Below are positions 45,303 through 59,521 of a stretch of 64,000 nt of DNA, in pieces. The notes below the pieces were generated by a model, which was not told the origin of the DNA, searched no databases, and saw only the letters and a list, made by a program, of their open reading frames with translations. Numbering within the stretch: position 1 is the stretch's first letter; the number at the start of each line of letters is the position of its first letter. The DNA is taken from the IMG/VR virus record IMGVR_UViG_3300024999_000030, positions 62,001-126,000 of that record; one strand, written 5' to 3'. The position numbers were made by a program, and so were the translations under genes.

Positions 45303-45958
45303 ATTATCATTTAAGCGCATTACCAGATTTAATGGAATATCTTGGAGAGACATATGTTCATAGGAATGGACAGGTGGAATTAAGAGATAAATGGTTATCT
45401 TGGCAAGGGGGAGTTTCAGAGTACTATAAAGACTGCGTGAATGATTCATATTTGTTTGATCTATCTCAATGGCACGCCTCTGGTACATTGACTGGTTGGG
45501 GTAATATAATTAAAGATCACGCTCATGGGGTGACATTGGATTTCGGTGGTGGTATAGGTACTTATTCTTTAATTATGGCCTCTTCTGATAAAACCAGTGA
45601 AGTTTGGTTTTATGATATTAATGAGGCTAATGAAAAATTTACCAAATATCGTATAGATAAACATAGTTTAGCTCATAAAGTGAAATATGGAATGCCCACA
45701 ACTCAAGTAGATACAATTGTGGCCATTGACGTTTTAGAGCATATGCCGGATAGAGTTTTAGCTGTTAAAGAGTGGGTTGATAAATTAAATCCTGGTGGTG
45801 TATTAATCTTAACTCACACCACCACAACGAGTGGCGGACAACATCCTATGCATCTTATGACTGATATCGAAATTCCAGTTGTAGCAGCCGCCCTTTCTGT
45901 GTCCTGCACCAAATTAGGCACTTTTTGGCCGCAGGTATGGGTGAAAAATGCACACTAA
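45284..45958 (+). CDS. Class I SAM-dependent methyltransferase
   Basis: TLDFGGGIG, DTIVAIDVLEHM and LNPGGVLIL. Confidence 0.88.
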   Translation: MSQTTIDYHLSALPDLMEYLGETYVHRNGQVELRDKWLSWQGGVSEYYKDCVNDSYLFDLSQWHASGTLTGWGNIIKDHAHGVTLDFGGGIGTYSLIMASSDKTSEVWFYDINEANEKFTKYRIDKHSLAHKVKYGMPTTQVDTIVAIDVLEHMPDRVLAVKEWVDKLNPGGVLILTHTTTTSGGQHPMHLMTDIEIPVVAAALSVSCTKLGTFWPQVWVKNAH

Positions 45959-46574
45959 CAACATACATACTGAAAAAGCATATATGGAAAGAGCACATGG
46001 GCCAGTTAGTCCAGTTTATTATACTGATGGTAGACCCATTACAGTCGGTTATAAATTATTAGATGAGTTATCTATACAGGGTGCCTTGGTTATAGATGTT
46101 GGCGCTTTTGCGGGATTTATAGGTAATTATTGTTTGCAGCGCGGAGCCCGAGTTACATTAATTGATATATTTAAGGGGGCGTTTCCCTCTTTTATGTTTA
46201 GCGTTCAGGGATCCAAAGAACAAATGCCATTTAGAGATAATTTTTTTGATTTTGCTGTATGTGGTGACACATTACATCATGGAGATTTAGATTCAACTCT
46301 ATTGGAAATTTATAGAATTCTTCGTCCAGGTGGCCAATTTATTTCTGTACGGGAGCCCTGTATAGCTTCCTCAGAAGACGAATGGACAGTATTACAAAAG
46401 GACTGCGGTTTAGTTGTTGCAGAGGGTATTTGTGAACGTAGGCCGAATCTAATTCAATATAAACGCGCTCTTACAGTGTTTCCTAAATTTAGTGTTTATA
46501 GTGGTGTGGACTTAACTCCAGCTAAAGATTTAAATTATGGAGATAAGGGCATTGTTATAAAGGCAATAAAATAG
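45948..46574 (+). CDS. Class I SAM-dependent methyltransferase
   Basis: VIDVGAFAG, MPFRDNFFDFAVCGDTLHH and ILRPGG. Confidence 0.88.
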   Translation: MHTNNIHTEKAYMERAHGPVSPVYYTDGRPITVGYKLLDELSIQGALVIDVGAFAGFIGNYCLQRGARVTLIDIFKGAFPSFMFSVQGSKEQMPFRDNFFDFAVCGDTLHHGDLDSTLLEIYRILRPGGQFISVREPCIASSEDEWTVLQKDCGLVVAEGICERRPNLIQYKRALTVFPKFSVYSGVDLTPAKDLNYGDKGIVIKAIK

Positions 46575-46585
46575 GACGGCGAAAA

Positions 46586-47275
46586 ATGAAACTTTCATTA
46601 TGTATGATGACATTAGATGGCGCTGATCGCATTGAAAAATGTTTACTTAATTTTGTTGGAATGGTCGATCAGATTGTTATATGTGTAGATGATAAAACAG
46701 TAGACAGCACAAGAGAGGTAGCGGCTAAAATTACCAATGAGGTATATGATTTTACTTTTGTACATTGGGGACAGGCAAAAGATAATATGTTACAATATCT
46801 CACTGGAGACTGGATACTTCTTATGGACGATGATGAAGATATGTCGATTGAAGATATTGGAATGCTCAAAACTGTAATAGAAACGGCTCCACTAGATGTG
46901 GATCTCTATGTAGTTCCCAGAAGACATTGGTTGGACTTGTCATGTACCAAATTAGATGAAACAAGGCCATACCCAGATTATCAATTAAGACTACATAGAA
47001 ATGTAGATTATATTAAGTGTGGAAATAAATTTGCCCATGCGTCCCCATCTGGGTACAATAAAAGCGAAATTATTCCATATGATATTCACATTAATCATTA
47101 TAATAAGGTGTATCACGACAGAGATTGGCATTTACGTCGTTATCAAATGTATGATGAATTGTTTCATAAATATGAGGGTATATCGTATTTGGAATTTATT
47201 AAAGAACACGTCAATCCGTTAGTACAAAAAATAGAAGAATGTCTTCCGACATTTAAACCAGAGGACAAAGAATGA
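46586..47275 (+). CDS. Glycosyltransferase family 2 (GT-A)
   Basis: LSLCMMTLD, CVDDKTVDST, WILLMDDDE and PYPDYQLRL; paralog of 43978..44571. Confidence 0.88.
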   Translation: MKLSLCMMTLDGADRIEKCLLNFVGMVDQIVICVDDKTVDSTREVAAKITNEVYDFTFVHWGQAKDNMLQYLTGDWILLMDDDEDMSIEDIGMLKTVIETAPLDVDLYVVPRRHWLDLSCTKLDETRPYPDYQLRLHRNVDYIKCGNKFAHASPSGYNKSEIIPYDIHINHYNKVYHDRDWHLRRYQMYDELFHKYEGISYLEFIKEHVNPLVQKIEECLPTFKPEDKE

Positions 47276-47868
47276 TATATAATGCTGATTTTTATTTAAA
47301 TAGAAATAAAATTACACGACCATCAGCTCTTGTGGTTTGTCCAATAGTTTTTGCTTTACTAGATGCCCCACAAACTGTGTGTGATTTTGGGTGTGGAGTA
47401 GGCACTTGGTTAAAAGTGTTTTCTGAGCTTGGAACGCAAGATGTTTTGGGATTAGAGGGAGATTGGCTAGATACTCAATATGTAGTGATTCCATTTGAAT
47501 CGTTGAAAATTACAGACTTATCTTCTACGGTGCAATTAAACAAAATATATGATTTAGCTGTATCTTTAGAGGTGGCTGAGCATATTGATGAAAAATATGC
47601 TGATGTGTTTGTGGATAATATAGCCCAAGCTTCAGATACTATATTGTTTTCTGCGGCAATTCCGGGTCAAGGTGGTGTCAATCATGTTAATGAGCAACCC
47701 CACCAATACTGGATAGATAAATTCGAAAACAGAGGATATGTTACTTTCGATTGCATTAGGTGGAGAATTGCCAATAATCCAAAAGTGTTTCCGTGGTATC
47801 AAAATAATATTTATATTTTTTCACGCAATCCTCGACATTCTATTAAACTCACGACCCTAAGTTCATAA
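47272..47868 (+). CDS. Class I SAM-dependent methyltransferase (surface-glycan-cluster type)
   Basis: VCDFGCGVGTWL, YDLAVSLEVAEHI and PGQGGVNHVNEQPHQYW. Confidence 0.9.
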   Translation: MIYNADFYLNRNKITRPSALVVCPIVFALLDAPQTVCDFGCGVGTWLKVFSELGTQDVLGLEGDWLDTQYVVIPFESLKITDLSSTVQLNKIYDLAVSLEVAEHIDEKYADVFVDNIAQASDTILFSAAIPGQGGVNHVNEQPHQYWIDKFENRGYVTFDCIRWRIANNPKVFPWYQNNIYIFSRNPRHSIKLTTLSS

Positions 47869-47869
47869 C

Positions 47870-47898
47870 TTGCAATTTATCTCGATAGGTATTATATT
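47870..47898 (+). promoter_or_regulatory. Sigma70-like promoter TTGCAA-17-TATATT
   Basis: Exact 17-bp spacer; upstream of the GGAGGT RBS of the radical SAM gene. Confidence 0.6.
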
Positions 47899-47916
47899 AT
47901 TACCTTGGAGGTTAAT

Positions 47917-48726
47917 ATGGTTCCACAGTTAATTCAAATAGAATCCTCCACAGCATGTAGTGCTGCATGTGATTTTTGCCCACATAGTTCACTTCAGAGA
48001 AAAATGGGTTCTATGACGGATGCTTTGTTTTTAAAAATTATTAACGATGCTAATAATATGGGAATAAAGCACATTCTTCTTTTTCTTAATGGTGAGCCTT
48101 TGATTTTTAATCGTTTTTTTTACTGGCTTGAAGAATTGCGTCAGCGGAATATGGTGACTACTATCTTTACTAATGCTTCACATTTAACTGAAGATAAAGC
48201 TCATCGTTTAATTTCTTACGCTGATGTAATTAGAGATATTTTTTTCAGCGTTGCTGGTATAAATAAGGAAACCTGTTTTAATCTTACTGGTTTAGATTTT
48301 GATACGGTGGTTTCTAATGTTAAATATTTTGTGAATCTGAATAATGGTTTAATCCCAATTGCCGCTCATATGCCACTATATAGCAAAACAGTAGCCTTTT
48401 CGAAGCAATGGAAATTATTTTGGTCAGATGTGGTTGGTAGGGCCGATTTAACCGATTATTATAATTTTGCTGGATTAGTCACGCCAGAGAAAAGTCAAAG
48501 AAAAAAAGCGTTTTGTGGTCGCCTTACTCATTTAACAGTGTTATATGATGGTAGGGTGTGTCTGTGCTGTATGGACCCAGAGGGACAAGTAATTTTAGGA
48601 GATCTAAACACTCAGTCTATCACGGAAGTTTATAATGGTGAAATAATGGAAAAATATCGTATGGCCCATCACCGTGGAGACTTTTCTTACCCGTTGTGTT
48701 GTAACTGCAATATGAATGAAGTATAA
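47917..48726 (+). CDS. Radical SAM protein with SPASM/twitch domain
   Basis: CSAACDFC (CxxxCxxC), GEPL, and C-terminal CGRL...YDGRVCLCCMD...CCNC. Start moved from the track's TTG at 47905 to the ATG at 47917 behind GGAGGT. Confidence 0.9.
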   Translation: MVPQLIQIESSTACSAACDFCPHSSLQRKMGSMTDALFLKIINDANNMGIKHILLFLNGEPLIFNRFFYWLEELRQRNMVTTIFTNASHLTEDKAHRLISYADVIRDIFFSVAGINKETCFNLTGLDFDTVVSNVKYFVNLNNGLIPIAAHMPLYSKTVAFSKQWKLFWSDVVGRADLTDYYNFAGLVTPEKSQRKKAFCGRLTHLTVLYDGRVCLCCMDPEGQVILGDLNTQSITEVYNGEIMEKYRMAHHRGDFSYPLCCNCNMNEV

Positions 48727-48727
48727 T
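48699..48727 (+). promoter_or_regulatory. Sigma70-like promoter TTGTAA-17-TATAAT upstream of gmd
   Basis: Consensus -10 with 17-bp spacing, overlapping the end of the radical SAM gene. Confidence 0.45.
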
Positions 48728-48763
48728 ATTGTGGTTATCTAACTTAAGAGGAAAGGAATTGAT

Positions 48764-49738
48764 ATGAAAAAGGCATTAGTTACTGGTATTTATGGACAAG
48801 ATGGTGGTTTTTTAGCAAAACAGCTACTTCAAGAGAACTATGAAGTGTGGGGTGTAAAGCGCCGCTCAGCCTCATCTATTCCATGGCGGCTGGAAGCACT
48901 TGGTATCTTATCTCACCCAAATCTCCATATTATTGAGGGAGATGTAACAGATCCAATTTCCATGTTAGACTGTGTAAAACGCTCTCAACCAGATGAAGTT
49001 TATAATACGGCAGCCATGAGTCATGTGGGAACCTCATTTAAACAGCCTCTTGCCACTGCCCAAATTGATGGGTTGGGAGTTCTAAATATATTAGAGGCTA
49101 TTCGTACATTAGCTCCTGAAGCTAGATTTGTACAGTGTTCCACCTCGGAGCTTTATGGTAATTTACCCCCGGAGCAACAATCTCTAGGCGTATATCATCC
49201 ACGTAGTCCATATGGGGTGGCAAAGCTTTTTGGTTTTTGGACTACAGTTAATTATCGTGAAACATATAATATTTTTGCTTGCAATTCCATTTGCTATAAT
49301 CACGAATCAGCTTTACGCGGCGAAGACTTTGTTACTAGAAAAATTACACTTGGCTTAGCTGATATTGTAGCTGGTAAAAGCAAGGTGATTAAGTTGGGAA
49401 ATATTGATGCTCGTCGAGATTGGCAACATGCTAAAGATGCGTGTCGAGCAATGATTATGATGGCCCGCGCGGATGTAGCGGATGATTTTGTTGTTGCTAC
49501 TGGAGAATCTCATTCTGTACGAGAGTTTATTCAATTGGCGGTGAAGAAAGCTGGCTTAGGAGATGATTGTGAACGTTTTATTGAAATCGATCCACAGTTT
49601 TATCGTCCTGCTGAGGTCCCAGATTTGAAAGGGAATCCAGATAAAATTATGAAAACTTTGGGATGGAAACCTATTACATCTTACGAACAGTTAGTCGAGG
49701 AAATGGTTAATTATGATGTCTTTGGGAAGAAGCCTTGA
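48764..49738 (+). CDS. gmd: GDP-mannose 4,6-dehydratase
   Basis: KKALVTGIYGQDG, AAMSHVGTSF, STSELYG, PRSPYGVAK (YxxxK), NHESALRGEDFVTRKIT, LGNIDARRDW and YRPAEV. Confidence 0.95.
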   Translation: MKKALVTGIYGQDGGFLAKQLLQENYEVWGVKRRSASSIPWRLEALGILSHPNLHIIEGDVTDPISMLDCVKRSQPDEVYNTAAMSHVGTSFKQPLATAQIDGLGVLNILEAIRTLAPEARFVQCSTSELYGNLPPEQQSLGVYHPRSPYGVAKLFGFWTTVNYRETYNIFACNSICYNHESALRGEDFVTRKITLGLADIVAGKSKVIKLGNIDARRDWQHAKDACRAMIMMARADVADDFVVATGESHSVREFIQLAVKKAGLGDDCERFIEIDPQFYRPAEVPDLKGNPDKIMKTLGWKPITSYEQLVEEMVNYDVFGKKP

Positions 49739-49763
49739 CTTTTTCTAACTTTAAAATTATATT
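49735..49763 (+). promoter_or_regulatory. Sigma70-like promoter TTGACT-17-TATATT upstream of the tubulin gene
   Basis: The -35 overlaps the gmd stop codon; exact 17-bp spacer. Confidence 0.7.
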
Positions 49764-49799
49764 CCTCATGTAGAGAGAATCATATGCAAGGAGAAAATT

Positions 49800-51104
49800 A
49801 TGAGTGATAACGAATTTAAGATAGAGGCTACTGGAAATAGTGGCATTCATATCGAGAGTACTGGCGGAGTTAAAATTGAAGCAAAAGCTGGAACTCCGGT
49901 AGAGGTGAGAGGAGTAAAAGTGGGAATGACAGGTGAGCTTGCGATTCGTTTCGGTGTCATCGGTGCCGGGCAGGGAGGCTCTAGAATAGCCGAGGTGTTT
50001 GGTGCGCTGGGTTACCCATCTTGTGCCATTAACACGGCCAAACAAGATCTAAAATATATTAAACTGCCTGAAGACCGTAAACTTTGTATGGAATATGGTC
50101 TTGGCGGCGCAGGACGAGACATTCAATTAGGTGCCGAAGCCTTTACTGCTCATCGAGAATCTGTGCAGGCCCTTATTGATCGCACTTTTTCTGATGATGT
50201 GGACTATGCATTAGTGTGTGTTGGTGGTGGTGGTGGTACGGGATCAGGTGTAGCCGAACAACTTATTACGTTGTTACATTCTTATAATATGCCGGTTGGT
50301 ATGATTTACACTTTACCTCAATCTAATGAAGACGCTTTAACCCACGCTAATGCCGTTAAAGTGTTGGATAAGCTCAGTAAATTGGTTAAGGAAAAAATAC
50401 TCACTACTCTTATCGTGGTAGATAACGCTAAGATTGAAGCCATTTATCCTTCTTTATCTACTGTGGCTTTTTGGCAGAAAGCAAATGGTGACTTAGTTAA
50501 TATTCTCCATCAATTCAATCGTCTTACTGCACAGCCATCTCGTTTTGTATCTCTTGATCCCATGGACTTTGCTAAAATTATAACTGAGGGAGGGTGTACT
50601 GTATATGGAGCAGCTAGACTCTCAGAATATAAAGATGCAGAAAGCCTTGCGCAGACGGTAATTAACAGTGTTAAATCCGGCCTATTAGCCTCTGAATTTA
50701 CTCTATCTGAAGCCACAATGGGTGGATTAATTGTTACTGGTTCATTTGATATGCTTTCAACTGTTCCACAGGAAGATATCAATTATGCTTTATATAATCT
50801 TACTTCTATAGTTGGCCATGCTGGTCTTTATAGAGGAATTTATGATTTAGATTCTACGGATGCTGGACATGGCCTTGTGGTTTATACTATGTTGAGTGGT
50901 CTTGGTGTGCCCCATCGTAGAGTTGAAGCCCTTATCCAACGTGGCGAAGAGGGCGCTCAAGCCCTTGAGATTAAAAAGAATGATCATGCTAAAATGAACG
51001 TTATTGATTCTGATTCTTCCAGCGCCGATAATGACCGTCTTAAAAACATGCAAGCTAAACATGGTCCATTGGGTAAACTTTTGGGAAATAGAAAGAAGCC
51101 TTAA
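49800..51104 (+). CDS. Tubulin/FtsZ-superfamily GTPase
   Basis: GVIGAGQGGSRI (T1), NTAKQDL, GGAGRDIQLG, GGGGGTGSG (signature loop), VVDN and LDPMDF (T7-like loop). AAGGAG RBS. Confidence 0.92.
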   Translation: MSDNEFKIEATGNSGIHIESTGGVKIEAKAGTPVEVRGVKVGMTGELAIRFGVIGAGQGGSRIAEVFGALGYPSCAINTAKQDLKYIKLPEDRKLCMEYGLGGAGRDIQLGAEAFTAHRESVQALIDRTFSDDVDYALVCVGGGGGTGSGVAEQLITLLHSYNMPVGMIYTLPQSNEDALTHANAVKVLDKLSKLVKEKILTTLIVVDNAKIEAIYPSLSTVAFWQKANGDLVNILHQFNRLTAQPSRFVSLDPMDFAKIITEGGCTVYGAARLSEYKDAESLAQTVINSVKSGLLASEFTLSEATMGGLIVTGSFDMLSTVPQEDINYALYNLTSIVGHAGLYRGIYDLDSTDAGHGLVVYTMLSGLGVPHRRVEALIQRGEEGAQALEIKKNDHAKMNVIDSDSSSADNDRLKNMQAKHGPLGKLLGNRKKP

Positions 51105-51113
51105 GGAGAGAAG

Positions 51114-51278
51114 ATGAACTTTATAAAAGGTTTAGGGTCTTTGGGTTTATGGAATTTCATATTTTTCCAGTGGTTTTTTACTAGATTGGCTTTTAAATAT
51201 GATTTAAATACTAATGCTTATCTGGGATGGAAAATTCTTTTCCCGGTAGTTCCATTGACTCGATGGATTTTTAATTAA
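51114..51278 (+). CDS. 54-aa aromatic/hydrophobic small protein (below track cutoff)
   Basis: AAGGAG RBS. MNFIKGLGSLGLWNFIFFQWFFTRLAFKYDLNTNAYLGWKILFPVVPLTRWIFN; ends before the terminator. Confidence 0.7.
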   Translation: MNFIKGLGSLGLWNFIFFQWFFTRLAFKYDLNTNAYLGWKILFPVVPLTRWIFN

Positions 51279-51298: not shown

Positions 51299-51322
51299 GG
51301 CGCCCGCAAGGGCGCCTTTTTT
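51299..51322 (+). terminator. Rho-independent terminator
   Basis: GGCGCCC-GCAA-GGGCGCC followed by T6 (7-bp stem, GNRA loop). Confidence 0.92.
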
Positions 51323-51334
51323 GTTTCTTTTAGT

Positions 51335-51344
51335 CTATTAATGA
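51335..51344 (+). promoter_or_regulatory. Candidate late promoter variant CTATTAATGA
   Basis: Directly after the terminator. The context ctattaat(g)ataattgtta resembles 63572. About 30 nt before the ATG at 51374. Confidence 0.4.
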
Positions 51345-51373
51345 TAATTGTTATATGGATTGAGGAAAATATA

Positions 51374-51858
51374 ATGACAAAAATAATTTTTCTTTTTGGA
51401 AAAGAGGCTAAAAAATGTACTAAATGTCAACAAGATAAGTTATTATCAGAATTTCCAAAAAACAAAAGGGAAAAGAATAAAATATTATTAAGAAAGAAAG
51501 CACAAATACGCAGAAAAGCTAGAGCCCTACAAGACCCAGAATATAGATTGCTTCTTTGCTGTAGGAGCCGAATTAGCGATGCTATTAGAAGAAATAGGGG
51601 TTTTAGTGGAAAAAATCAAACCACTAAACAGCTAATAGGATGTTCATTATTACAACTTAGGCAACATATTGAAAGTAAGTGGCAACCGGGAATGACTTGG
51701 GAAAATTATGGTATCCGAGGGTGGCACATAGATCATATTAAACCATGTGCTTCGTTTATTCTAACGGACGAAAAACAATTACAACAATGTTTTTTCATTA
51801 TACAAATCTTCAGCCCTTGTGGTGGAGAGATAATTTAACGAAAGGAGCGAAAACATGA
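51374..51858 (+). pseudogene. Degenerate/frameshifted HNH endonuclease-like gene
   Basis: Has KKCTKC, LIGCS...HIE and MTWENYG..GWHIDHIKPCASF. After a T6 run (51790-51795) the -1 frame continues HYTNLQPLWWRDNLTKG and stops at TGA 51856-58, overlapping the amidase ATG. Confidence 0.8.
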
Positions 51859-52496
51859 AATTTAATACTGATTATTCCGCAACAACCACGGATTATTATC
51901 TGGTGGAAACAGTAAAACAAGGCATAACACTTCATTATACTGCTGGCAGCACTGCTTCTGGAGCCATTAGCACGTTATGTCAACAAGATATGGTATGTGT
52001 GCCTTTTGTGGTGGATAAAGATGGCACTGTCTATCAACTTTTTAATCCAAAATATTATGCTTTTCATTTGGGGATCCGTGGAGCAGCAGAAGGTTATAAA
52101 AAAGGACATTTTGATAAAAAATTTCTAAGTGTGGAAATCGTCAATGAGGGACCATTAAAAAAAGTTGGTTCAGATTATTTATGGTGGCCTAAAAATTGGG
52201 GAGCTAAATATACAGGAAAAGTAGTTAATTATTCTTTTCGTGGTTTTGATTATCATGCGGCATTTCCAGAGGTTCAAATCCAGGCTGTTTGTGAATTAAT
52301 AAAACATCTTTGTACTGAGTTTAATATTTCTAAAAGTTTAGTGCCAAAAGATAAACGTGAATTATTAGATTTAGATTATATGGATACCTTTGAGGGGATA
52401 TGTTCGCATGTTAATTTCAGGTGGGACAAATGGGACATTCCAGGTGAACCAGTCTTTCCGTGGGATAGGCTACAAAAGTATTTAGAAGACAAATGA
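51855..52496 (+). CDS. N-acetylmuramoyl-L-alanine amidase (Amidase_2), probable endolysin
   Basis: ITLHYTAG, FVVDKDGTVYQ, SVEIVNEG and ICSHVNFRWDKWD (zinc ligands H/H/D plus catalytic E). Confidence 0.88.
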   Translation: MKFNTDYSATTTDYYLVETVKQGITLHYTAGSTASGAISTLCQQDMVCVPFVVDKDGTVYQLFNPKYYAFHLGIRGAAEGYKKGHFDKKFLSVEIVNEGPLKKVGSDYLWWPKNWGAKYTGKVVNYSFRGFDYHAAFPEVQIQAVCELIKHLCTEFNISKSLVPKDKRELLDLDYMDTFEGICSHVNFRWDKWDIPGEPVFPWDRLQKYLEDK

Positions 52497-53398
52497 TTGA
52501 AATTACAGATCAGATAACCGGCATATATGAAAAAATTACAATAATCAATGAATTGCATTGGTCGCATAAACTTATGCATATTAATGAAGCTTGGGCTAGG
52601 GCAACAGGTAAAGGCGTTAAAATAGGTATAGTAGATACTGGTTGCGACATTCATCATCCAGATTTAAATGGCGCTATTGTTGGATGTCATAACTTTTCTC
52701 AATCATCGGGGCAATGCGAAGATATGCATGGGCATGGCACACACATAGCGGGTATTATAGCGGCTAAAATTACTGGCTCCGGTGTTTCGGGCGTAGCTCA
52801 TGGAGCTAGTTTATATATCGCAAGAGCTATAGATAATTCTGGAGTAGGAAATCCAGCAAACATAGCTAGGGCTATTGAAGCTTGTATAGATGCTGGATGT
52901 GATGTTATTAATTTATCTCTTGGGTGTCCAGAAGAATACATTCCAATGTCTCGGGCTATTCAACGAGCTACTGAAAAAAATATTATTGTTGTAGCTGCAG
53001 CAGGCAATTGTGGAGATAATAACGTTTCAACGGTAGAAGAACAGTGGCCAGCTAGATTACCATTTGTTATTTCTGTAGCTGCTATTAATAAAAAACTAAT
53101 TAACGCTTCATGGTCAGCTTCTGGTGATATTGAGTTTTCTGCTCCAGGAGTTGATATTTTATCTTGTTATCCAGGTGGTAGGTATGCTACTATGAGTGGC
53201 ACGAGTCAGGCCTGCCCGTTTATAACTGGGGCGTGTGCTCTAATGAAAGAAATAAAACGCGATATAAATAGAGAGCAAATTGTTAAATTGCTGTCGCAGT
53301 ATTCTATGTCTATAGGACATCAAGCCAGCTTTGGGGCCGGGGTGGTTAACGTTGTTGCTGCTTTAGAGTCCCTAGAGGGTATGTTGAAGCGAGGTTAA
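52493..53398 (+). CDS. Subtilisin-family (S8) serine protease with no signal peptide
   Basis: Catalytic triad IVDTG / HGTHIAG / GTSQACP, oxyanion AAGN. Confidence 0.95.
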   Translation: MIEITDQITGIYEKITIINELHWSHKLMHINEAWARATGKGVKIGIVDTGCDIHHPDLNGAIVGCHNFSQSSGQCEDMHGHGTHIAGIIAAKITGSGVSGVAHGASLYIARAIDNSGVGNPANIARAIEACIDAGCDVINLSLGCPEEYIPMSRAIQRATEKNIIVVAAAGNCGDNNVSTVEEQWPARLPFVISVAAINKKLINASWSASGDIEFSAPGVDILSCYPGGRYATMSGTSQACPFITGACALMKEIKRDINREQIVKLLSQYSMSIGHQASFGAGVVNVVAALESLEGMLKRG

Positions 53399-54109
53399 AT
53401 GAGTCAAGCGTCCGACCAAGCACGTGAGGAAATTTTAAAAGAAATCAAAGAGCTGCTTTCTGAAGGTGGTTCAGTTTCTCTTATTCCTAAATTAAGGGTT
53501 CCCAAACCTCCTCTTGCAGACAGAATGGCCGAAAAGCTTACTAATCTAGTAGGTTCCTGGCGCTTTGCACTATCCATGGTCGGCGCAGTTGTTCTATGGT
53601 TTCTTTGCAATATTGGGTTTTTCTTTTTTATGCCCTCTTTTGACCCATATCCATTTAATTTTTTAAATTTAATGTTAGCGGCGGTAGCAGCTTTTCAGGC
53701 TCCAGCTATTTTAATGGCACAAAACGCACAATATAGACGTGATTTACAACGAGAGATCCATCAATATGAAGTTATTTTAGCTGTTGAGGGTGAACTTCGT
53801 GCGTTATATAATAAATTATCTCATCTTGGAACTGATGTCGCTGTTGCTATTGAGGAGCTAGAGTTTTCACAAGATCAATCTAAAAAAGAATTGGGGGAAC
53901 TTTCAAATAATGTATCAAAAAATCTTAGTAGTACTTATGGCTGTCATTTAAAAATGGAAAAACTTCAAGATACAGCAGAAGATATTGTAACTAAAACTTC
54001 CATAATGCTTAGTCTAATTAAGAAACTAAAAGATGCCTCAGATCCATTTCCAATTACAAAAGAGATAAATGATAAAGGAAGGATTTTTCCAGATGATCCA
54101 AAGGGTTAA
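53399..54109 (+). CDS. DUF1003-like membrane protein with C-terminal coiled coil (candidate holin)
   Basis: LADRMAEKLTNLVGSWRF and FDPYPFNFLNLMLAAVAAFQAPAILMAQN match the DUF1003 pattern; two hydrophobic segments. Confidence 0.8.
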   Translation: MSQASDQAREEILKEIKELLSEGGSVSLIPKLRVPKPPLADRMAEKLTNLVGSWRFALSMVGAVVLWFLCNIGFFFFMPSFDPYPFNFLNLMLAAVAAFQAPAILMAQNAQYRRDLQREIHQYEVILAVEGELRALYNKLSHLGTDVAVAIEELEFSQDQSKKELGELSNNVSKNLSSTYGCHLKMEKLQDTAEDIVTKTSIMLSLIKKLKDASDPFPITKEINDKGRIFPDDPKG

Positions 54110-54460: not shown

Positions 54461-54474
54461 TATTGGAGACAAAT

Positions 54475-56046
54475 TTGTTAACTTTTGTAGTTCAACATAA
54501 TATAACTAAAGTAGAAAAAATAGAGGATGTACCTCAAAGTTTTTTATTTGCATTGAATGATTATCTTAGTTATACCGAACAAGACTATCAATATACTTGG
54601 AGATATAAAAATACAGCCTGGAATGGAAAGAATTATCTTCTAGGCGGACGTTGGAACAAAGATATTTTTGTTCCTAGTTTTAGTTCTTTGAGTTTTAGGT
54701 CTGGTTTATTAAAGCGTGTTTTATATTTTTGCAAACAAAACGATATTGGATATTTAGTAATCGATGAACGTTCTTTTCCAGATTTAAATGATGGGTTACT
54801 GTGGAAGGGAAATTTACGTGATTATCAACAAATAGCCATAGATAGATTTTTAGATTATAAAAAGGGTATTATGGCCGCAGCCACAGGGGCGGGAAAATCT
54901 ATTATTATTACTAATATTGTTAGTCGTCTTAATATTCCCACTGTTATTTTATGCGGGACCATAGACCTTGTTATACAAATGAAAGAACATTTAGAACATG
55001 AGATTCCAGATTCAGCTATTGGAATTGTGGGCGATGGAAAATGTGAAATAGAACAAATTACCGTAAGTACTTGGCAATCTGCAGCAAGATCAATTGACAC
55101 TAGGGCCAAAACTTATTTTTATGACAGACAGGTGTCAGAAAAATTTGACACATCGCATTCTAATAAAATAACCACCATGCTTAAAGCCGCTCAATTAGTT
55201 GTATTAGACGAATCTCATTGTGCGAGAGCTAAAACCATTCAAACGGTTTTGCGTAACATCAACGCACCATATGTGTTGGGCACAAGTGCTACCCCCAAAC
55301 GCGATGAGGGAGATGATTTACTAATAGAAGCTGAGCTTGGTAATATTTTTTATGATATTAGTGCTTCTACTCTTATTGATAAGGGCTGGCTTGTTAGACC
55401 AACCATAGAATATCACTATATAGATAACTCGGCTCGCAGAGGAGAGTGGGACGATTTTCATGCTGTTTATAAACAACTCATTGTCAATAACGATGTTAGG
55501 AATTATATTATTGGAGAGAAGGCTCGTGAAATGGTACGAGCTGGCAGAAAAACATTAATACTGGTAGATTATTTAGAGGAGCACGGTAAGGTACTTGAAG
55601 AGATGCTATCAGATGTTCAAGCTGAATTTTTGAATGCCACTCTTTCATCTAAAAGAAGACAAACACTGTTAAATGCATTTAGAAATGGAGAAATAGATTG
55701 TATGATTGCGACTTCTTTAGCCGATGAGGGTCTCGATGTTCCCATTATTTCTGGTGAAATTTTAGCAGGTGGAAAGCGGGGCAAGACTAAAATAAGGCAA
55801 CGGGTTGGTCGCGTCTTACGTCCCCATGAAGATAAAGTAGATGCTCGTGTTATAGACTTTATAGACGATGGCAAGTTTGTTTTAGATCATAGTGTTGCTA
55901 GAATTGCTGCACTTAAAATGGAACCAGCATTTGACTTAGTGGCGAATAATGTTCCTAAAGAACGTAAAGAAATTATTCTTAAGAAGATTGAAAAAGCTGT
56001 AGGACGGATGAGAAAGGATGAGTTCGATGAGCAAACAACTGGATAA
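54475..56046 (+). CDS. Superfamily 2 DNA helicase (UvsW/XPB-like)
   Basis: ATGAGKS, DESH, SATPKR, ATSLADEGLDVP and QRVGRVLR. Start is probably the TTG at 54475 after GGAG (track gives 54463). Confidence 0.9.
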   Translation: MLTFVVQHNITKVEKIEDVPQSFLFALNDYLSYTEQDYQYTWRYKNTAWNGKNYLLGGRWNKDIFVPSFSSLSFRSGLLKRVLYFCKQNDIGYLVIDERSFPDLNDGLLWKGNLRDYQQIAIDRFLDYKKGIMAAATGAGKSIIITNIVSRLNIPTVILCGTIDLVIQMKEHLEHEIPDSAIGIVGDGKCEIEQITVSTWQSAARSIDTRAKTYFYDRQVSEKFDTSHSNKITTMLKAAQLVVLDESHCARAKTIQTVLRNINAPYVLGTSATPKRDEGDDLLIEAELGNIFYDISASTLIDKGWLVRPTIEYHYIDNSARRGEWDDFHAVYKQLIVNNDVRNYIIGEKAREMVRAGRKTLILVDYLEEHGKVLEEMLSDVQAEFLNATLSSKRRQTLLNAFRNGEIDCMIATSLADEGLDVPIISGEILAGGKRGKTKIRQRVGRVLRPHEDKVDARVIDFIDDGKFVLDHSVARIAALKMEPAFDLVANNVPKERKEIILKKIEKAVGRMRKDEFDEQTTG

Positions 56047-56884
56047 TGCGGTCAAACATCTTACTGTAGAAATTTTAGAAAATCTAGCTCCAGAAGCTGT
56101 GTTGAAAAATGCAGATATGGAATATAGTAAACCTAATATTACAATGGCCCGTCGCGCTATCACCCGATTTAAAAAACAAATGATTAGTGCAGCTAATGCT
56201 GATGCTATTGAAATGGATCCAACTGTCACCAAATTTAAAAATTCCTATATTAAAAACACTCGTGATGTAGCTGATGTACGTGAAAAAGGTAGAGTCCGCG
56301 CATCATCTGATGGCTCTTTAACCCCCATGGAAGAATGGGGGCAATTTGAGTTGCTTTCTTATTTTTTTGAATTATATTATAGTAGGACGGGTAAAGATTA
56401 TCCAATAGAAACTCCTGGTGTAATTTATAGTAGATTTATAAAAAATAAAGGAACGTGGGAACAAAAATCAACTAGGGGTTTAAATGTTATGTCTTTTTTA
56501 TTGAAAAAATTGAATTCTCCAGAATCTGTTAAAGATTATTTAGATTGGTGGTTTGCATATTCATTTACAAGGGGGCAGTCGTTAAATTGGGGATGGTTGG
56601 CTAGTGCGACAATGTTAAGTTCATATACGGTTTACATGACCAATTTACAACATAAAACTGTGGCTCCAGCAACTACAATATCCCCAACTTTACCAATAGA
56701 TTTTATAGGATATATACAGGGGATCGGCGGTATTTTTAATTATATTGGAAATATGAAAACCCATAAAGATTTGCAATATGTATATGCAGCTTGGAAAGAT
56801 AAAATGCAAACGCTTCCATCTCATCCAGTGGTTAAAATGTTAGAAGAAGCCCAAAGCCGTGGCCTATTAGGAGAAAAGAAATGA
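56018..56884 (+). CDS. Hypothetical protein, possible replication initiator
   Basis: Lies upstream of the DnaC-like/DnaB pair; helical and basic; no motif certain. Confidence 0.5.
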   Translation: MSSMSKQLDNAVKHLTVEILENLAPEAVLKNADMEYSKPNITMARRAITRFKKQMISAANADAIEMDPTVTKFKNSYIKNTRDVADVREKGRVRASSDGSLTPMEEWGQFELLSYFFELYYSRTGKDYPIETPGVIYSRFIKNKGTWEQKSTRGLNVMSFLLKKLNSPESVKDYLDWWFAYSFTRGQSLNWGWLASATMLSSYTVYMTNLQHKTVAPATTISPTLPIDFIGYIQGIGGIFNYIGNMKTHKDLQYVYAAWKDKMQTLPSHPVVKMLEEAQSRGLLGEKK

Positions 56885-57273
56885 AGAAATATGTTTTAGT
56901 TAGGGCTGAAGATGGTACGTTATTAGGCGGGGGAATTTATGCTGGCGCTTGGGGGGAAGCTTTTATTAAAATTGAAAGAAGCGATAATGAAACTATTATG
57001 ATAAATGTTTCTAAGGCGATAGCTTTACATTTTTTTGAGGAACCCCCTGAAGCTTTATTAAATTATATGCGTATCACAAATTCTTCTTCCGTTGACCCTC
57101 CTGCTCCTGGAATTGTGGGTACGTCTTCAAGGTCTTCTCGCCCATCCGTAGATCAAGGGGTTCAGGGTTTAGTGGATGCTGGTCCTCCAGGCCACACTTC
57201 TGATGCTTCTGGCGTTGGATTGGCAGATTTGCCCATACCTAAAAAATCTAACAGGCCCAGGAGAAAAACATGA
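56881..57273 (+). CDS. Hypothetical protein with P/S-rich C-terminus
   Basis: ATGA-coupled ORF in the replication operon. Confidence 0.6.
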   Translation: MKKYVLVRAEDGTLLGGGIYAGAWGEAFIKIERSDNETIMINVSKAIALHFFEEPPEALLNYMRITNSSSVDPPAPGIVGTSSRSSRPSVDQGVQGLVDAGPPGHTSDASGVGLADLPIPKKSNRPRRKT

Positions 57274-58025
57274 TAATTGGCAGTAATAGGTCTGTAGTTT
57301 TTAAAAAACTCGCAGAACTCAAAGAACGCACAGTAAATCAGTGTGTTGTTTGTCATGGTGCTGATCCAGGCTGTCGATGTCATGCCCTTATGTTAATGTA
57401 TGAAGCAGCGGCAGCGGCTAATGTGCCAGCAAAATTTTGGAGCATAAAGACAACAGACTTTGGTGTTGGTCAAGAGCAGAATCCAGTCGTTTCAGATTTA
57501 AAAAGTAAATGGATTAAACTAATTTTTGAAATTGAAAACACAGTACAAAATATTCCTTTAATTGTTGTTAGTGGCCCAAATGGCACAGGTAAAACAATGA
57601 TGGCTAGTATCCTCTTGAAGTCTGCTGCTACCGTACGTGGTATTTCACCTCAATATATTTTGTTTAATCAACTCATTTCTCTACATTATTCTAAAGAAGG
57701 CAATAAAGATGAAATTTTGGAAAGATTACATGCATGTGATTTACTTGTTATAGATGAATTCGGAAAAGAGTATACTAAAACTAATCAATTTGGGGAGATA
57801 GATACAACTAGCTCCATTGCCAATTATGCTAAGTTTGTAGCTGAAAACATATTAAAAACCAGAAGCGATGCAAGTTTAACCACGGTGATTATTACCAATG
57901 ACACTATTGATGAGCTTAAGTCTAAATATGGGGGTCCAGGAAGATCTGTAGATTCTATTTTGGCCGCCTCCTCGACTGTAACGCTACATCATGCGGGTAT
58001 AGATTTTAGGAAGGTGAAAATTTGA
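57270..58025 (+). CDS. DnaC/IstB-like AAA+ helicase loader
   Basis: N-terminal CVVC...CRC, Walker A GPNGTGKT, Walker B LLVIDEFGKE and TVIITN; directly upstream of DnaB. Confidence 0.85.
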   Translation: MIIGSNRSVVFKKLAELKERTVNQCVVCHGADPGCRCHALMLMYEAAAAANVPAKFWSIKTTDFGVGQEQNPVVSDLKSKWIKLIFEIENTVQNIPLIVVSGPNGTGKTMMASILLKSAATVRGISPQYILFNQLISLHYSKEGNKDEILERLHACDLLVIDEFGKEYTKTNQFGEIDTTSSIANYAKFVAENILKTRSDASLTTVIITNDTIDELKSKYGGPGRSVDSILAASSTVTLHHAGIDFRKVKI

Positions 58026-59521
58026 TTGATCAAAACATTTCTATAGATGAACATCTACTTTCAATTTTATTACAAGATAAACAACATGTGATTTCCATAT
58101 TAGAAGAAGACAAACTTACTGGAGATTATTTTGATCCTGAGTGGCGCCCAGTCTTTGACAATATTGTTATATACTATAGAAAATTTAAAGAAATATTAGA
58201 TAAAGATAAAGTCTTTGATCAGCTCAAACGTCGCGGAGTATCAAGCGTGGAGTTATCTAAGAGATATGCTATATATCTTTCTCTTGAAAATCTTAAAACG
58301 CCCACTAAAGACTATAAATATTATGTAGATGCTATTAAAACTCGTAAATATAAAATTATGTTGCACGAAGTTGTATCTAAAGCCGATAAAATGTGTAACA
58401 CCATGAATGACCCAATATCAGCGGCAAAAGATTTGGCAAAAGTTGGTAGCGAAATCGCAACACTGTCGGCTCAAGATAGAGTAGTGAGAACTTCTTTAGC
58501 CGAAAGCGCTCCAGTCATGAGCGATAATTATCGTATTGCAAAATCCAATCCAGAAATTATAAGAGGTATAATGACTGGATTCCAAAAATTAGATGAATTA
58601 ACTTGGGGTATAAATCCTGGTGAAGTTTTATTGATAGTCGGGCCGACTGGAGGTGGTAAGTCCATTAGCTTAGTCTCTATGTCTGCATACATCGCTAATG
58701 GTATTAGATATTGTGCAAAATGCGGATTTCAATTGTTTTTACATACTCAAAACAGATGTCCAAAGTGTGGAACTATTTTTGCTACTCCGGGGGATATTTA
58801 TCGAATATCTCCAAAGAATGTAGCCTATGTTTCTATTGAGATGCCAGCGGAAGACTGCTTAAGGAGATTTTGTTCAGCTTCGTTGGGACTTAAGGAGAAA
58901 GAAGTTAGACGTGGCCAGTTAAGCGACCAGGATGAACAAATATATCTTAATTACTTAGAATCAGTTAGAAGTGGAAAGGGACCAGTTGGATTTTATGTTA
59001 TTGATGTGCCAAGAGGTGAAGATATAAACTTTGTCTCTACAGAAATTGACCGTCAGGAAGCCCTACATGGCGTCAGGATGGACGTAGTGGTTATTGACTA
59101 CCTGCAGCTCATGAAAGCTACTACCGGCGACCACAGAGACACTGGCGAAGATTGGAAGGCTCAGACGGCTATTTCTGAAGAGGTACATGAATATGCTAGA
59201 ACTAAACGTATTCCAGTAATCACAGCCGCTCAGTCCACCTCTCTTCGTGGTATTAAAGGCGAAGCTGTAAGATATGGAACCCACCGTGTTTCTAGGGCAG
59301 AGGGCACCGCATTTAATATGAATATTATTGTTCAAATTGAGGACCCATTAGAAAAACAAGAAGAAGAGAAAAAAGAAGATGATACTGAACTAACAATGAA
59401 GTTTTATGTTGTTAAAAATAGAGGCGGAGAAAAGGGTGTCATTGTAATGCAAAAAGATTTTTCAAGAATGCAAATTCATCATATTTTGGATATTTCTTAT
59501 GCGACTTTAGAAGCCTCATAA
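58022..59521 (+). CDS. dnaB: DnaB-like replicative helicase with zinc-ribbon insertion
   Basis: TGFQKLDELTWG, GPTGGGKS, SIEM, VVVIDYLQLM, IPVITAAQ and VVKNRGG; TTG start. Confidence 0.9.
   Translation: MIDQNISIDEHLLSILLQDKQHVISILEEDKLTGDYFDPEWRPVFDNIVIYYRKFKEILDKDKVFDQLKRRGVSSVELSKRYAIYLSLENLKTPTKDYKYYVDAIKTRKYKIMLHEVVSKADKMCNTMNDPISAAKDLAKVGSEIATLSAQDRVVRTSLAESAPVMSDNYRIAKSNPEIIRGIMTGFQKLDELTWGINPGEVLLIVGPTGGGKSISLVSMSAYIANGIRYCAKCGFQLFLHTQNRCPKCGTIFATPGDIYRISPKNVAYVSIEMPAEDCLRRFCSASLGLKEKEVRRGQLSDQDEQIYLNYLESVRSGKGPVGFYVIDVPRGEDINFVSTEIDRQEALHGVRMDVVVIDYLQLMKATTGDHRDTGEDWKAQTAISEEVHEYARTKRIPVITAAQSTSLRGIKGEAVRYGTHRVSRAEGTAFNMNIIVQIEDPLEKQEEEKKEDDTELTMKFYVVKNRGGEKGVIVMQKDFSRMQIHHILDISYATLEAS

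What the first reader, a model, noticed from the sequence alone, without database searches (positions are those of the whole stretch)
49800..51104. The tubulin looks closer to archaeal CetZ than to PhuZ/FtsZ and has unusual termini
Seen versus recalled CetZ1 motifs (from memory, not aligned): IGAGQGGSRI/IGFGQAGGKV, NTAKQDL/NSAKADL, GAGRDIQLGAE/GVGADNELGAE, LPQSNED/LPGSDEG, LDPMDFAKIITEGG/VDSSEIINTLAGGG. The N-terminus has a short triple repeat (KIEATG/HIESTG/KIEAKAG). The C-terminus has a helical linker and an amphipathic basic tail (PLGKLLGNRKKP) that could bind membrane.
Basis: inference. Interest (0 to 1): 0.6.

Follow-up and report, generated by a model that had tools for sequence, protein, structure and literature searches.

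The report
TubZ-like tubulin of a huge phage
The gene encodes an intact tubulin/FtsZ-type GTPase of a 333-kb groundwater phage. Its nearest characterised relatives are the plasmid DNA-moving TubZ proteins, with archaeal CetZ second. It belongs to a large, unstudied huge-phage family with a conserved basic C-terminal peptide.

Summary
The ORF at 49800-51104 (+) is real: 434 aa, with a strong Shine-Dalgarno site, a full tubulin/FtsZ GTPase core and an intact T7 catalytic loop.

The window belongs to a complete 332.7-kb huge phage from Rifle groundwater, published by Al-Shayeb et al. 2020. The gene is labelled 'hypothetical' there.

The CetZ-like motifs exist, but TubZ shares them. Every measure ranks the families TubZ/RepX > CetZ > FtsZ >> PhuZ: pairwise bits, profile-profile scores, Foldseek, VIA-align Z, and the Pfam TubZ-like_C domain.

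In a 48-sequence ML tree the protein and 27 metagenomic relatives form their own clade (100/99). That clade lies outside CetZ, FtsZ and PhuZ and joins TubZ only weakly (69/89). A sister relation to CetZ is not rejected (AU p = 0.09).

- **N-terminal repeat:** real (shuffle P = 0.0016) but disordered and specific to the subclade.
- **C-terminal tail:** basic and part of a family-wide motif, K-x-S-x-[FLM]-G-[KR]. It is not measurably amphipathic.

The genome has no TubR-like gene, flanking centromere-type repeats, chimallin, integrase or ParB. The gene lies in conserved synteny just upstream of UvsW helicase, helicase loader and DnaB.

Best reading: a cytomotive TubZ-like filament that positions replicating phage DNA, with the tail acting as a partner or subunit docking peptide.

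The parts
49735..49763 (+). Promoter-like site, TTGACT-17-TATATT, just upstream of the gene
   Evidence: Consensus scan, 10 of 12 matches. The number of such sites in the region is not above the shuffle expectation, so this is only a lead.
49789..49794 (+). Shine-Dalgarno sequence AAGGAG, 8 nt before the ATG
   Evidence: Read directly from the sequence. It supports the annotated start and translation of the N-terminal extension.
49800..51104 (+). Tubulin/FtsZ-superfamily gene, TubZ-like, 434 aa (P0001)
   Evidence: ORF and translation. Pfam PF00091 plus PF22453. Best PDB matches are TubZ/RepX. AF2 model has pLDDT 86.5 and pTM 0.82.
49800..49931 (+). N-terminal extension (aa 1-44). It holds three copies of the motif h-[KH]-[IV]-E-[AS]-x-G at aa 6, 16 and 24, followed by PVEVRGVKVG.
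   Evidence: Repeat statistic P = 0.0016. pLDDT is below 50 for aa 1-31, with a short hairpin at 34-41. Compared with the 84% relative L028 there are 15 synonymous and 13 non-synonymous codon differences and the frame is kept. Extension length varies from 32 to 163 aa across the family.
49944..50981 (+). GTPase core and activation domain (about aa 49-394). It includes the T1 loop GAGQGG, the T4 G-box GGGGGTGSG, the T7 loop SLDPMDF, and the long C-terminal helix at aa 372-394.
   Evidence: Motif columns. Invariant residues in 120 relatives include G55, G57, G60, G145, G146, G148, N209, N229, D253 and D256. Secondary structure comes from the model.
50982..51101 (+). C-terminal region (aa 395-434). 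It comprises the conserved K-x-x-K-M-x-V segment, an acidic Ser/Asp linker, and the tail DRLKNMQAKHGPLGKLLGNRKKP that carries the family motif K-x-S/G-x-[FLM]-G-[KR]-[LM] followed by basic residues.
   Evidence: Alignments A1 and A2: G425 is nearly invariant and M399 is invariant. Tails are listed. The motif is found in 10 of 14 loci with the window's gene context and in 0 of 67 others.
51299..51326 (+). Intrinsic-terminator-like hairpin, GGCGCCC-GCAA-GGGCGCC followed by a T run, about 195 nt after the stop codon
   Evidence: Terminator scan: 7 G-C pairs plus TTTTTTGTTT. This suggests the tubulin gene, with the 54-aa ORF, is its own transcription unit (inference).
54463..59521 (+). Conserved downstream replication block: UvsW-type helicase (54463-56046), a 288-aa and a 130-aa ORF, an IstB/DnaC-like AAA loader (57270-58025) and a DnaB-type helicase (58022-59521)
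   Evidence: Pfam. The same order, tubulin then UvsW then loader then DnaB, appears in relatives at 39-84% identity.

Best explanation
The gene encodes a polymerising, GTP-hydrolysing tubulin-superfamily protein of the TubZ structural type. It is made by a 333-kb lytic-type huge phage.

Inferred mechanism:
- GTP-bound subunits assemble head to tail. The T7 loop (D253/D256) of one subunit completes the GTPase site of the next.
- This gives dynamic, treadmilling (cytomotive) filaments.
- The filaments position or move replicating phage DNA, or the replication factory, inside the host cell. TubZ does this for plasmids and PhuZ does it for phage DNA.
- The long helix (aa 372-394), flexible acidic linker and conserved basic end peptide (K-H-G-P-L-G-K-L-L-G-N-R-K-K-P) act as the docking element. 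By analogy with TubZ, it contacts the next subunit in the filament and/or recruits the cargo or adaptor.
- The adaptor is not a classical TubR and remains unidentified.

What is shown: fold, family affinity, intact catalytic residues, conserved tail motif and conserved gene neighbourhood. What is inferred: polymerisation, the cargo, and the role of the tail.
For: **Family affinity**
- Pfam Tubulin plus TubZ-like_C.
- The best PDB sequence hits are TubZ-Bt and RepX.
- Foldseek's top 22 hits are all TubZ, and VIA-align gives TubZ Z 38-42.
- The hhalign score against plasmid TubZ is 303, against 153 for CetZ.

**Intact enzyme**
- GTP-binding and T7 residues are invariant in 120 relatives.

**TubZ-like architecture**
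- The confident AF2 model shows a long C-terminal helix followed by a disordered linker.
- The tail motif is conserved down to about 37% identity.
- Plasmid TubZ tails also end basic...SNPFKKR and ...DNPLLRKRH.
- The TubZ tail is documented to contact upper subunits and to bind TubRC and TubY (PMC5322520).

**Context**
- The order tubulin, UvsW, loader, DnaB is conserved across huge-phage contigs of 206-481 kb.
- The family is essentially phage-borne. At least 197 relatives were found in IMG/VR. Only one 3.3-kb contig was found in 185,579 species genomes.
Against: - No TubR-like gene lies upstream or anywhere in the genome by pairwise search, which is a low-sensitivity test.
- No iteron or centromere-like repeat array flanks the gene.
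- Monophyly with TubZ is only weakly supported (69/89), and a CetZ sister position is not rejected.
- No expression or polymerisation data exist.
- Gene neighbourhood is weak evidence for function.
- In the closest relative the upstream genes differ. In the window, 6 lysis or other genes separate the tubulin from UvsW.
Confidence: 0.6

Rival explanations
1. Membrane-tethered, CetZ/FtsZ-like filament. The basic C-terminal peptide binds the host membrane directly, like the short MinD or FtsA membrane-targeting sequences. The filaments would remodel cell shape, block or redirect host division, or anchor the replication or assembly site at the envelope.
For: - CetZ is the second-closest family by structure and profile.
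- The tail is short, Leu/Lys-rich and carries net charge +4.
- No phage-encoded adaptor is conserved next to the gene in two unrelated phage lineages. This fits a universal target such as membrane, DNA or the protein itself.
- CetZ1 associates with liposomes in vitro (bioRxiv 10.1101/2024.04.08.588506).
Against: - The helical hydrophobic moment of the tail is 0.15-0.20, no better than shuffles.
- The most conserved tail positions are S, G and K/R rather than a hydrophobic face.
- CetZ tails are acidic and hydrophobic (...ELDALF...ELDSLF), unlike this one.
- The protein lies outside the CetZ clade.
Confidence: 0.15
2. Type III partition motor for a plasmid-like prophage or pseudolysogenic state, as with TubZ-TubR-tubS of Clostridium phage c-st. 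The filament would segregate the circular phage genome to daughter cells.
For: - TubZ is the nearest characterised family.
- The published genome is circular and 332,697 bp.
- Jumbo-phage tubulins have been proposed to serve pseudolysogeny (PMC7824862).
Against: - No TubR-like gene in the usual upstream position or elsewhere.
- No centromere-like repeats beside the gene.
- No tyrosine integrase and no ParB in the genome.
- The c-st TubZ is a distant relative, at 36 bits and hhalign 101.
Confidence: 0.1
3. PhuZ-like spindle. The filaments would centre a proteinaceous phage nucleus and deliver capsids to it.
For: - It is a huge-phage tubulin.
- Al-Shayeb et al. 2020 referred to the huge-phage tubulin homologues collectively as PhuZ (PMC7162821).
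- More distant relatives (type B) sit between the terminase and capsid genes.
Against: - PhuZ is the most distant family tested: phrog_4733 E 0.099, 3-7 bits, hhalign 74.5, and a separate clade at 100/100.
- No chimallin was found with the 201phi2-1 protein or with Pfam PF25677.
- PhuZ tails are acidic (...DEDGMVV), whereas this one is basic.
Confidence: 0.1

Closest known systems
TubZ / RepX of Bacillus low-copy plasmids (pBtoxis TubZ-Bt, pXO1-type RepX; PDB 2xka, 3m89, 4ei7)
   Same: - It is the best match by sequence, profile and structure.
- The Pfam TubZ-like_C domain is present.
- It shares the GxGQxG T1 loop, the LP..(D/E) T5 motif and the DxxD T7 loop.
- It shares the long C-terminal helix followed by a flexible tail with a basic tip.
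   Different: - Identity is only about 25-30%.
- The protein sits in its own clade, joined to TubZ with weak support (69/89).
- There is no upstream TubR gene and no tubC-like repeats.
- It is encoded by a huge lytic-type phage beside replication genes, not in a plasmid replication/partition operon.
- It has a 44-aa N-terminal extension with a triple repeat.
CetZ (archaeal cell-shape tubulins; H. volcanii CetZ1/CetZ2, PDB 4b46/4b45)
   Same: - It is the second-closest family: VIA Z 35.6-38.1 and CetZ2 88 bits against the family profile.
- It shares the GQxGG T1 loop, ELGAE in T3 and LPxxxE in T5.
- A sister relationship is not statistically excluded (AU p = 0.092).
   Different: - The protein lies outside the well-supported CetZ clade (98/95).
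- The profile score is half that for TubZ.
- CetZ tails end acidic and hydrophobic (ELDALF), whereas this one is basic.
- CetZ is archaeal and chromosomal; this protein is phage-borne.
Bacillus phage G gp138 and a Pontibacillus homologue (uncharacterised TubZ-like)
   Same: - Phage G is the only cultured phage with a hit: 27% identity, E 7e-21.
- It gives the highest BLASTP score among the references, 125 bits.
- It is also from a megaphage.
   Different: - It forms a separate clade with the Pontibacillus protein (99/99).
- It has a 98-aa gene directly upstream with faint TubR similarity.
- It has no N-terminal extension and lacks the S-x-F-G-K tail motif.
PhuZ (phiKZ-like nucleus-forming phages) and TubZ of Clostridium phage c-st
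   Same: Both are phage-encoded tubulin-superfamily filaments that move or position phage DNA.
   Different: - PhuZ is the most distant family tested.
- The PhuZ tail is acidic and its chimallin partner is absent here.
- The c-st TubZ scores only 36 bits, with hhalign 101.

Membership tests
Tubulin/FtsZ superfamily | GTPase domain with the G-box GGGTG(S/T)G, T1-T6 nucleotide-binding loops and a T7 loop carrying acidic catalytic residues | tested here: met
   PF00091 scores 49.7 bits against a cut-off of 33. GGGGGTGSG and SLDPMDF are present and invariant across 120 relatives. The fold has Z > 30 to dozens of FtsZ, TubZ and CetZ structures.
TubZ (type III partition tubulin) | TubZ-type C-terminal domain, with a long C-terminal helix followed by a flexible tail | tested here: met
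   PF22453 TubZ-like_C scores 27.6 bits against a cut-off of 26, which is marginal. The model has a helix at 372-394 followed by a disordered linker. The best structural matches are TubZ, with 342-368 residues aligned.
TubZ (type III partition tubulin) | Operon partner TubR (a small winged-helix centromere-binding protein directly upstream) and tubC/tubS repeat centromere | tested here: not met
   The upstream gene is GDP-mannose 4,6-dehydratase. No repeat array flanks the gene. No TubR-like protein was found in the genome: best E 0.025, using pairwise search only. All plasmid TubZ loci and phage G do have a roughly 100-aa gene upstream.
TubZ (type III partition tubulin) | Monophyly with characterised TubZ/RepX | tested here: inconclusive
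   The family, plasmid TubZ and the phage G group fall on one side of a branch, but with support of only 69/89. The c-st TubZ falls outside this grouping.
CetZ | Membership of the archaeal CetZ clade | tested here: not met
   The CetZ clade has 98/95 support and the query's family clade 100/99, and the two are separate. A sister position is not rejected (AU p = 0.092), but placement within CetZ is excluded by the starred branches.
CetZ | CetZ-type conserved C-terminal peptide (acidic and hydrophobic, ...ELDxLF) | tested here: not met
   The CetZ1 orthologue ends GGELDALF and the pHV4 CetZ ends ADELDSLF. The query ends GNRKKP.
CetZ | CetZ1-subfamily long M-loop with a hydrophobic tip (as described) | not tested
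   This region was not examined specifically.
PhuZ | Sequence membership, an acidic C-terminal tail, and co-occurrence with chimallin | tested here: not met
   phrog_4733 gives E 0.099 and phmmer 3-7 bits. PhuZ forms a separate clade at 100/100. PhuZ tails are acidic. No chimallin was found.
FtsZ | TIGR00065 equivalog score | tested here: not met
   The score is 62.7 bits against a cut-off of 295.2. FtsZ forms a separate clade at 100/100.
Tubulin/FtsZ superfamily | GTP-dependent polymerisation | not testable with these tools
   This needs biochemistry. The homodimer prediction was requested seven times and never answered.

The most novel reading that the evidence does not exclude
These proteins form a fifth, functionally distinct branch of prokaryotic and viral tubulins, restricted to huge phages. 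It would work without TubR or chimallin. Its conserved basic C-terminal peptide (K-x-S-x-F-G-K-L...DRRKR) would hook the filament directly to a universal target, either phage DNA or replisome or the host membrane. This would organise a shell-less replication factory. The clade-specific N-terminal strand repeats would act as a second, multivalent docking site.
Probability: 0.25. Interest if true: 0.7.

Novelty: new variant of a known kind. Interest (0 to 1): 0.45.

Why it matters
Only two phage tubulin systems have been studied: PhuZ with the chimallin nucleus, and the c-st TubZ-TubR partition system.

This gene represents a third group, which appears much larger in metagenomes:
- More than 550 relatives were found in the protein search.
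- At least 197 relatives were found in IMG/VR.
- The contigs carrying it reach 481 kb.

The group lacks both known partner systems and is consistently placed next to replication genes. In the published genome the gene is annotated only as 'hypothetical', and the paper refers to huge-phage tubulins collectively as PhuZ.

Characterising one member would show how huge phages without a nucleus shell organise their DNA in the cell. It would also show what a TubZ-type tail binds when TubR is absent. The work is directly testable with a purified protein and a GFP fusion.

Tried and rejected
**Rejected**
- **CetZ membership:** tree and tail comparison.
- **PhuZ membership:**
- **Chimallin in the genome:** not found with the 201phi2-1 gp105 protein or with PF25677.
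- **TubR-like gene:** neither the upstream position nor a genome-wide phmmer with five TubR-position proteins gave a hit. This test has low sensitivity.
- **Centromere-like repeats:** none around the gene here or in two relatives. The apparent 1.4-kb gene-free gap after the tubulin in L025 is an intein-containing UvsW helicase.
- **Conserved small partner gene next to the tubulin:** none is shared between the window, L025 and L026. None of the type-B neighbour families has a homologue in this genome.
- **Integrase and ParB:** absent.
- **DNA-level tandem repeat for the N-terminal motif:** none.
- **Amphipathic helix in the tail:** not supported.

**Led nowhere**
- Complex prediction for a homodimer (aa 45-434, two copies) was requested seven times and the machine did not complete, so there is no result either way.
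- The supplement text of Al-Shayeb et al. has no mention of tubulin, PhuZ or TubZ in the files held.

**Limits of the tree**
- Eukaryotic tubulin and BtubA/B could not be included, because no tool supplied their sequences.
- The large representative search was not used, because the word search already gave hundreds of relatives.
Full report
**What is there**

The window is bases 62001-126000 of a 332,730-bp virus record that CheckV rates as complete. The exact protein lies on 24 read contigs, most of them about 332 kb. These include a Rifle groundwater metagenome assembly and GCA_902730415.1.

It matches the circular 332,697-bp genomes GWB1_PHAGE_CIR_38_192, GWC1, GWC2 and GWD1 of Al-Shayeb et al. 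2020. In that GenBank file the gene is 'hypothetical protein', with its best UniRef hit in Anaeromusa acidaminophila.

The ORF at 49800-51104 (+) encodes 434 aa. AAGGAG lies 8 nt before the ATG. A promoter-like site lies at 49735-49763, and a strong terminator-like hairpin at 51299-51316.

**Is it a tubulin, and which kind?**

Family and database hits:
- Pfam gives Tubulin (E 7e-13, aa 55-216) and TubZ-like_C (E 3e-6, 27.6 bits against a cut-off of 26, aa 241-373).
- NCBIfam FtsZ scores far below its cut-off, 62.7 against 295 bits.
- PHROGs gives an unnamed family. PhuZ reaches only E 0.099.
- Among cultured phages, only Bacillus phage G gp138 is hit, at 27% identity.

I fetched natural reference sequences from annotated records:
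- TubZ-Bt, RepX and three other Bacillales plasmid TubZ proteins.
- Phage G gp138 and the c-st TubZ.
- Five PhuZ proteins.
- Four FtsZ proteins: E. coli, Bacillus, Phocaeicola and a haloarchaeon.
- Four haloarchaeal CetZ proteins, including a CetZ1 orthologue that matches PDB 4b46 at E 3e-176.

| Measure | TubZ / RepX | CetZ | FtsZ | c-st TubZ | PhuZ |
|---|---|---|---|---|---|
| PDB phmmer, single sequence (E) | 2e-21 / 1e-19 | 5e-12 to 1e-9 | 6e-12 (archaeal) | 1.6e-8 | no hit |
| Pairwise phmmer (bits) | 74-117 | 20-47 | 26-36 | 36 | 3-7 |
| Family profile vs PDB (bits) | 88-91 / 122 | 88 (CetZ2), 75 (CetZ1) | 80 (M. jannaschii) | 61-65 | not in the 60 shown |
| hhalign, family vs group (score) | 303 (plasmid), 268 (phage G group) | 153 | 130 | 101 | 74.5 |
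| Foldseek E-value | 4e-29 to 6e-26 | 8e-25 | about 1e-22 | not in top 50 | not in top 50 |
| VIA-align Z | 38-42 | 35.6-38.1 | 30-33 | 32 | not in top 50 |

The AF2 model used for the structure searches was built on 120 relatives and is confident (pLDDT 86.5, pTM 0.82). The top 22 Foldseek hits are all TubZ. The order is therefore TubZ > CetZ > FtsZ >> PhuZ.

**Phylogeny**

The tree has 48 sequences and 425 columns, built with IQ-TREE under LG+C20 PMSF using a careful search.

- The query and 27 metagenomic relatives form a clade (100/99).
- CetZ (98/95), FtsZ (100/100) and PhuZ (100/100) are separate clades.
- The family, the plasmid TubZ/RepX group and the phage G group fall on one side of a branch, but with only 69/89 support.
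- Forcing the family together with CetZ costs 11.3 log-likelihood units, with AU p = 0.092, so this is not rejected.

The deep placement is therefore unresolved by the tree. Membership within CetZ, PhuZ or FtsZ is excluded.

The tree lacks eukaryotic tubulin and BtubA/B, because no tool supplied those sequences. Several rows have long branches.

The recalled CetZ1 strings are close to the real ones, so the resemblance is genuine. The same columns are shared by TubZ-type proteins, however:
- T1 is GAGQKG in TubZ-Bt and GAGQGG here.
- T5 is SLPSGDPD in TubZ-Bt and TLPQSNED here.
- T7 is YDPSDLIKLL in TubZ-Bt and LDPMDFAKII here.

The motifs separate the TubZ/CetZ/this-family group from FtsZ and PhuZ. 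They do not point specifically to CetZ.

**Termini**

*N-terminus.*
- Three copies of h-[KH]-[IV]-E-[AS]-x-G lie at residues 6, 16 and 24. This is well above chance (P = 0.0016).
- The repeat is not a DNA tandem repeat.
- Residues 1-31 are predicted disordered.
- The extension is translated and under moderate constraint. Against the 84% relative it shows 15 synonymous and 13 non-synonymous differences, compared with 165 and 44 in the core.
- In the roughly 60% clade the motif appears twice, as GGI(S/T)LE.
- In the wider family the extension ranges from 32 to 163 aa and mostly lacks the repeat.

*C-terminus.*
- A long helix at 372-394 is followed by a conserved K..KM.V segment, an acidic Ser/Asp linker and a tail.
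- The tail's core, K-x-S/G-x-[FLM]-G-[KR]-[LM], is conserved down to about 37% identity. G425 is nearly invariant in 120 sequences.
- Most relatives add ...IIDRRKR at the end.
- The tail is basic (+4), but its helical hydrophobic moment is low (0.15-0.20) and no better than shuffles. 'Amphipathic' is therefore not supported.
- Plasmid TubZ tails also end basic.
- The TubZ tail is known to contact upper subunits in the filament and to bind TubRC and TubY (PMC5322520).

**Context**

Gene order in the window:
- The first 40 kb encode baseplate and tail proteins.
- A glycosylation block follows. It includes glycosyltransferases, methyltransferases, a radical-SAM/SPASM protein and GDP-mannose 4,6-dehydratase.
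- The tubulin gene comes next, followed by a 54-aa hydrophobic ORF, an HNH-like ORF, an Amidase_2, an S8 protease and a DUF1003 protein.
- Then come a UvsW-type helicase, two unknown ORFs, an AAA loader, DnaB, and an intein-bearing ribonucleotide reductase.

The order sugar genes, tubulin, UvsW, loader, DnaB recurs in relatives at 39-84% identity, on contigs of 206-481 kb.

Genes and features looked for and not found:
- A small gene in the TubR position, which every plasmid TubZ locus and phage G do have.
- A TubR-like protein anywhere in the genome.
- Flanking repeat arrays.
- Chimallin.
- Integrase or ParB.

**Distribution**
- The word search found more than 550 relatives. The longest contig carrying one is 481 kb and none exceeds 1 Mb.
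- IMG/VR holds at least 197 relatives.
- The scan of 185,579 species genomes gave a single 3.3-kb contig.
- A more distant subfamily ('type B') covers 67 of the IMG/VR loci at 32-38% identity, with proteins of about 385 aa. It lacks the helix-linker-tail region and sits between the terminase and capsid genes of an unrelated phage lineage. None of its neighbour families has a homologue in this genome.
- The basic tail motif is found in 10 of 14 loci with the replication-block context and in none of the others.

**Interpretation**

The protein is an intact polymerising GTPase of TubZ architecture. It belongs to a large, uncharacterised huge-phage clade.

The most likely role is a cytomotive filament that positions replicating phage DNA, with the tail as docking peptide (confidence 0.6). 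The rivals are:
- A membrane-tethered CetZ/FtsZ-like role (0.15).
- A plasmid-prophage partition motor (0.1).
- A PhuZ-type nucleus spindle (0.1).

Polymerisation, the cargo and the tail's target are all inferred. The homodimer prediction could not be run, and no read data could be obtained.

**Novelty**

The genome and the gene are public. Huge-phage tubulins have been mentioned only collectively, as 'PhuZ' (PMC7162821). Phage G's homologue has been noted as FtsZ/tubulin-like with a KEGG CetZ label (PMC12484599).

I found no characterisation of this clade in the library. It is best described as a new variant of a known kind: TubZ-like, but without TubR or chimallin, and with its own N- and C-terminal modules.

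Noticed in passing
L040-L106 (IMG/VR loci), e.g. L046:7866-9020 and L060:7833-9017: A second, shorter tubulin subfamily ('type B'): about 385 aa, 32-38% identical, ending ...KLEELKKLGDL, with an N-terminal D-I-D-I-S-L-P-D-I-P motif. In 45 of the loci it lies directly after a conserved 659-aa unknown protein. The gene sits between a T4-type large terminase, an ERCC4 nuclease and a capsid-like gene, in a phage lineage unrelated to this one.
   Followed up: partly
window 59678-62647 (+): A 989-aa ORF with ribonucleotide-reductase barrel similarity, interrupted by an intein with a LAGLIDADG homing-endonuclease domain.
   Followed up: no
L025:7402-9930 (+): In a relative (GCA_902730225.1, 305 kb), the UvsW-type helicase directly after the tubulin also carries an intein. 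The public gene call missed its first half and left an apparent 1.4-kb gap.
   Followed up: partly
window 51114-51278 (+): A 54-aa very hydrophobic, Trp/Phe-rich ORF starts 10 nt after the tubulin stop codon and lies before the terminator hairpin. It is called as a gene in the published genome but is absent from the 84%-identical relative L028. It could be a small membrane protein or could be spurious.
   Followed up: partly
window 51341-51838 (+): A 165-aa ORF (154 aa in the published call) with a CxxC...HIDHIKP pattern typical of HNH homing endonucleases. It is weakly similar to a 241-aa protein upstream of the tubulin in L025 (E 2e-8). It is probably a mobile endonuclease inserted beside the tubulin.
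   Followed up: no
window 40992-49738 (+): A ten-gene glycan-modification block lies between the tail genes and the tubulin. It contains three glycosyltransferases, several methyltransferases, a radical-SAM/SPASM protein and GDP-mannose 4,6-dehydratase. Sugar-nucleotide genes precede the tubulin in distant relatives too, but the set differs, and most of the block is missing in the closest relative L028.
   Followed up: partly
window 4288-10161 and 23011-29307 (+): Two giant ORFs (1957 and 2098 aa) in the baseplate/tail module have no PHROG match at E <= 1e-5.
   Followed up: no
window 51855-54109 (+): An Amidase_2 (likely endolysin), a subtilisin-like S8 protease and a DUF1003 membrane protein sit together between the tubulin and the UvsW helicase. 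The S8-DUF1003 pair is kept in L028 and in the P0006 contig.
   Followed up: no
L005:3692-3988 (Bacillus phage G gp137): The 98-aa gene directly upstream of phage G's tubulin shows faint similarity to TubR of pBtoxis (phmmer E 1.5e-3 in a five-sequence set). Phage G may therefore have a TubR-TubZ pair, unlike the phage studied here.
   Followed up: partly
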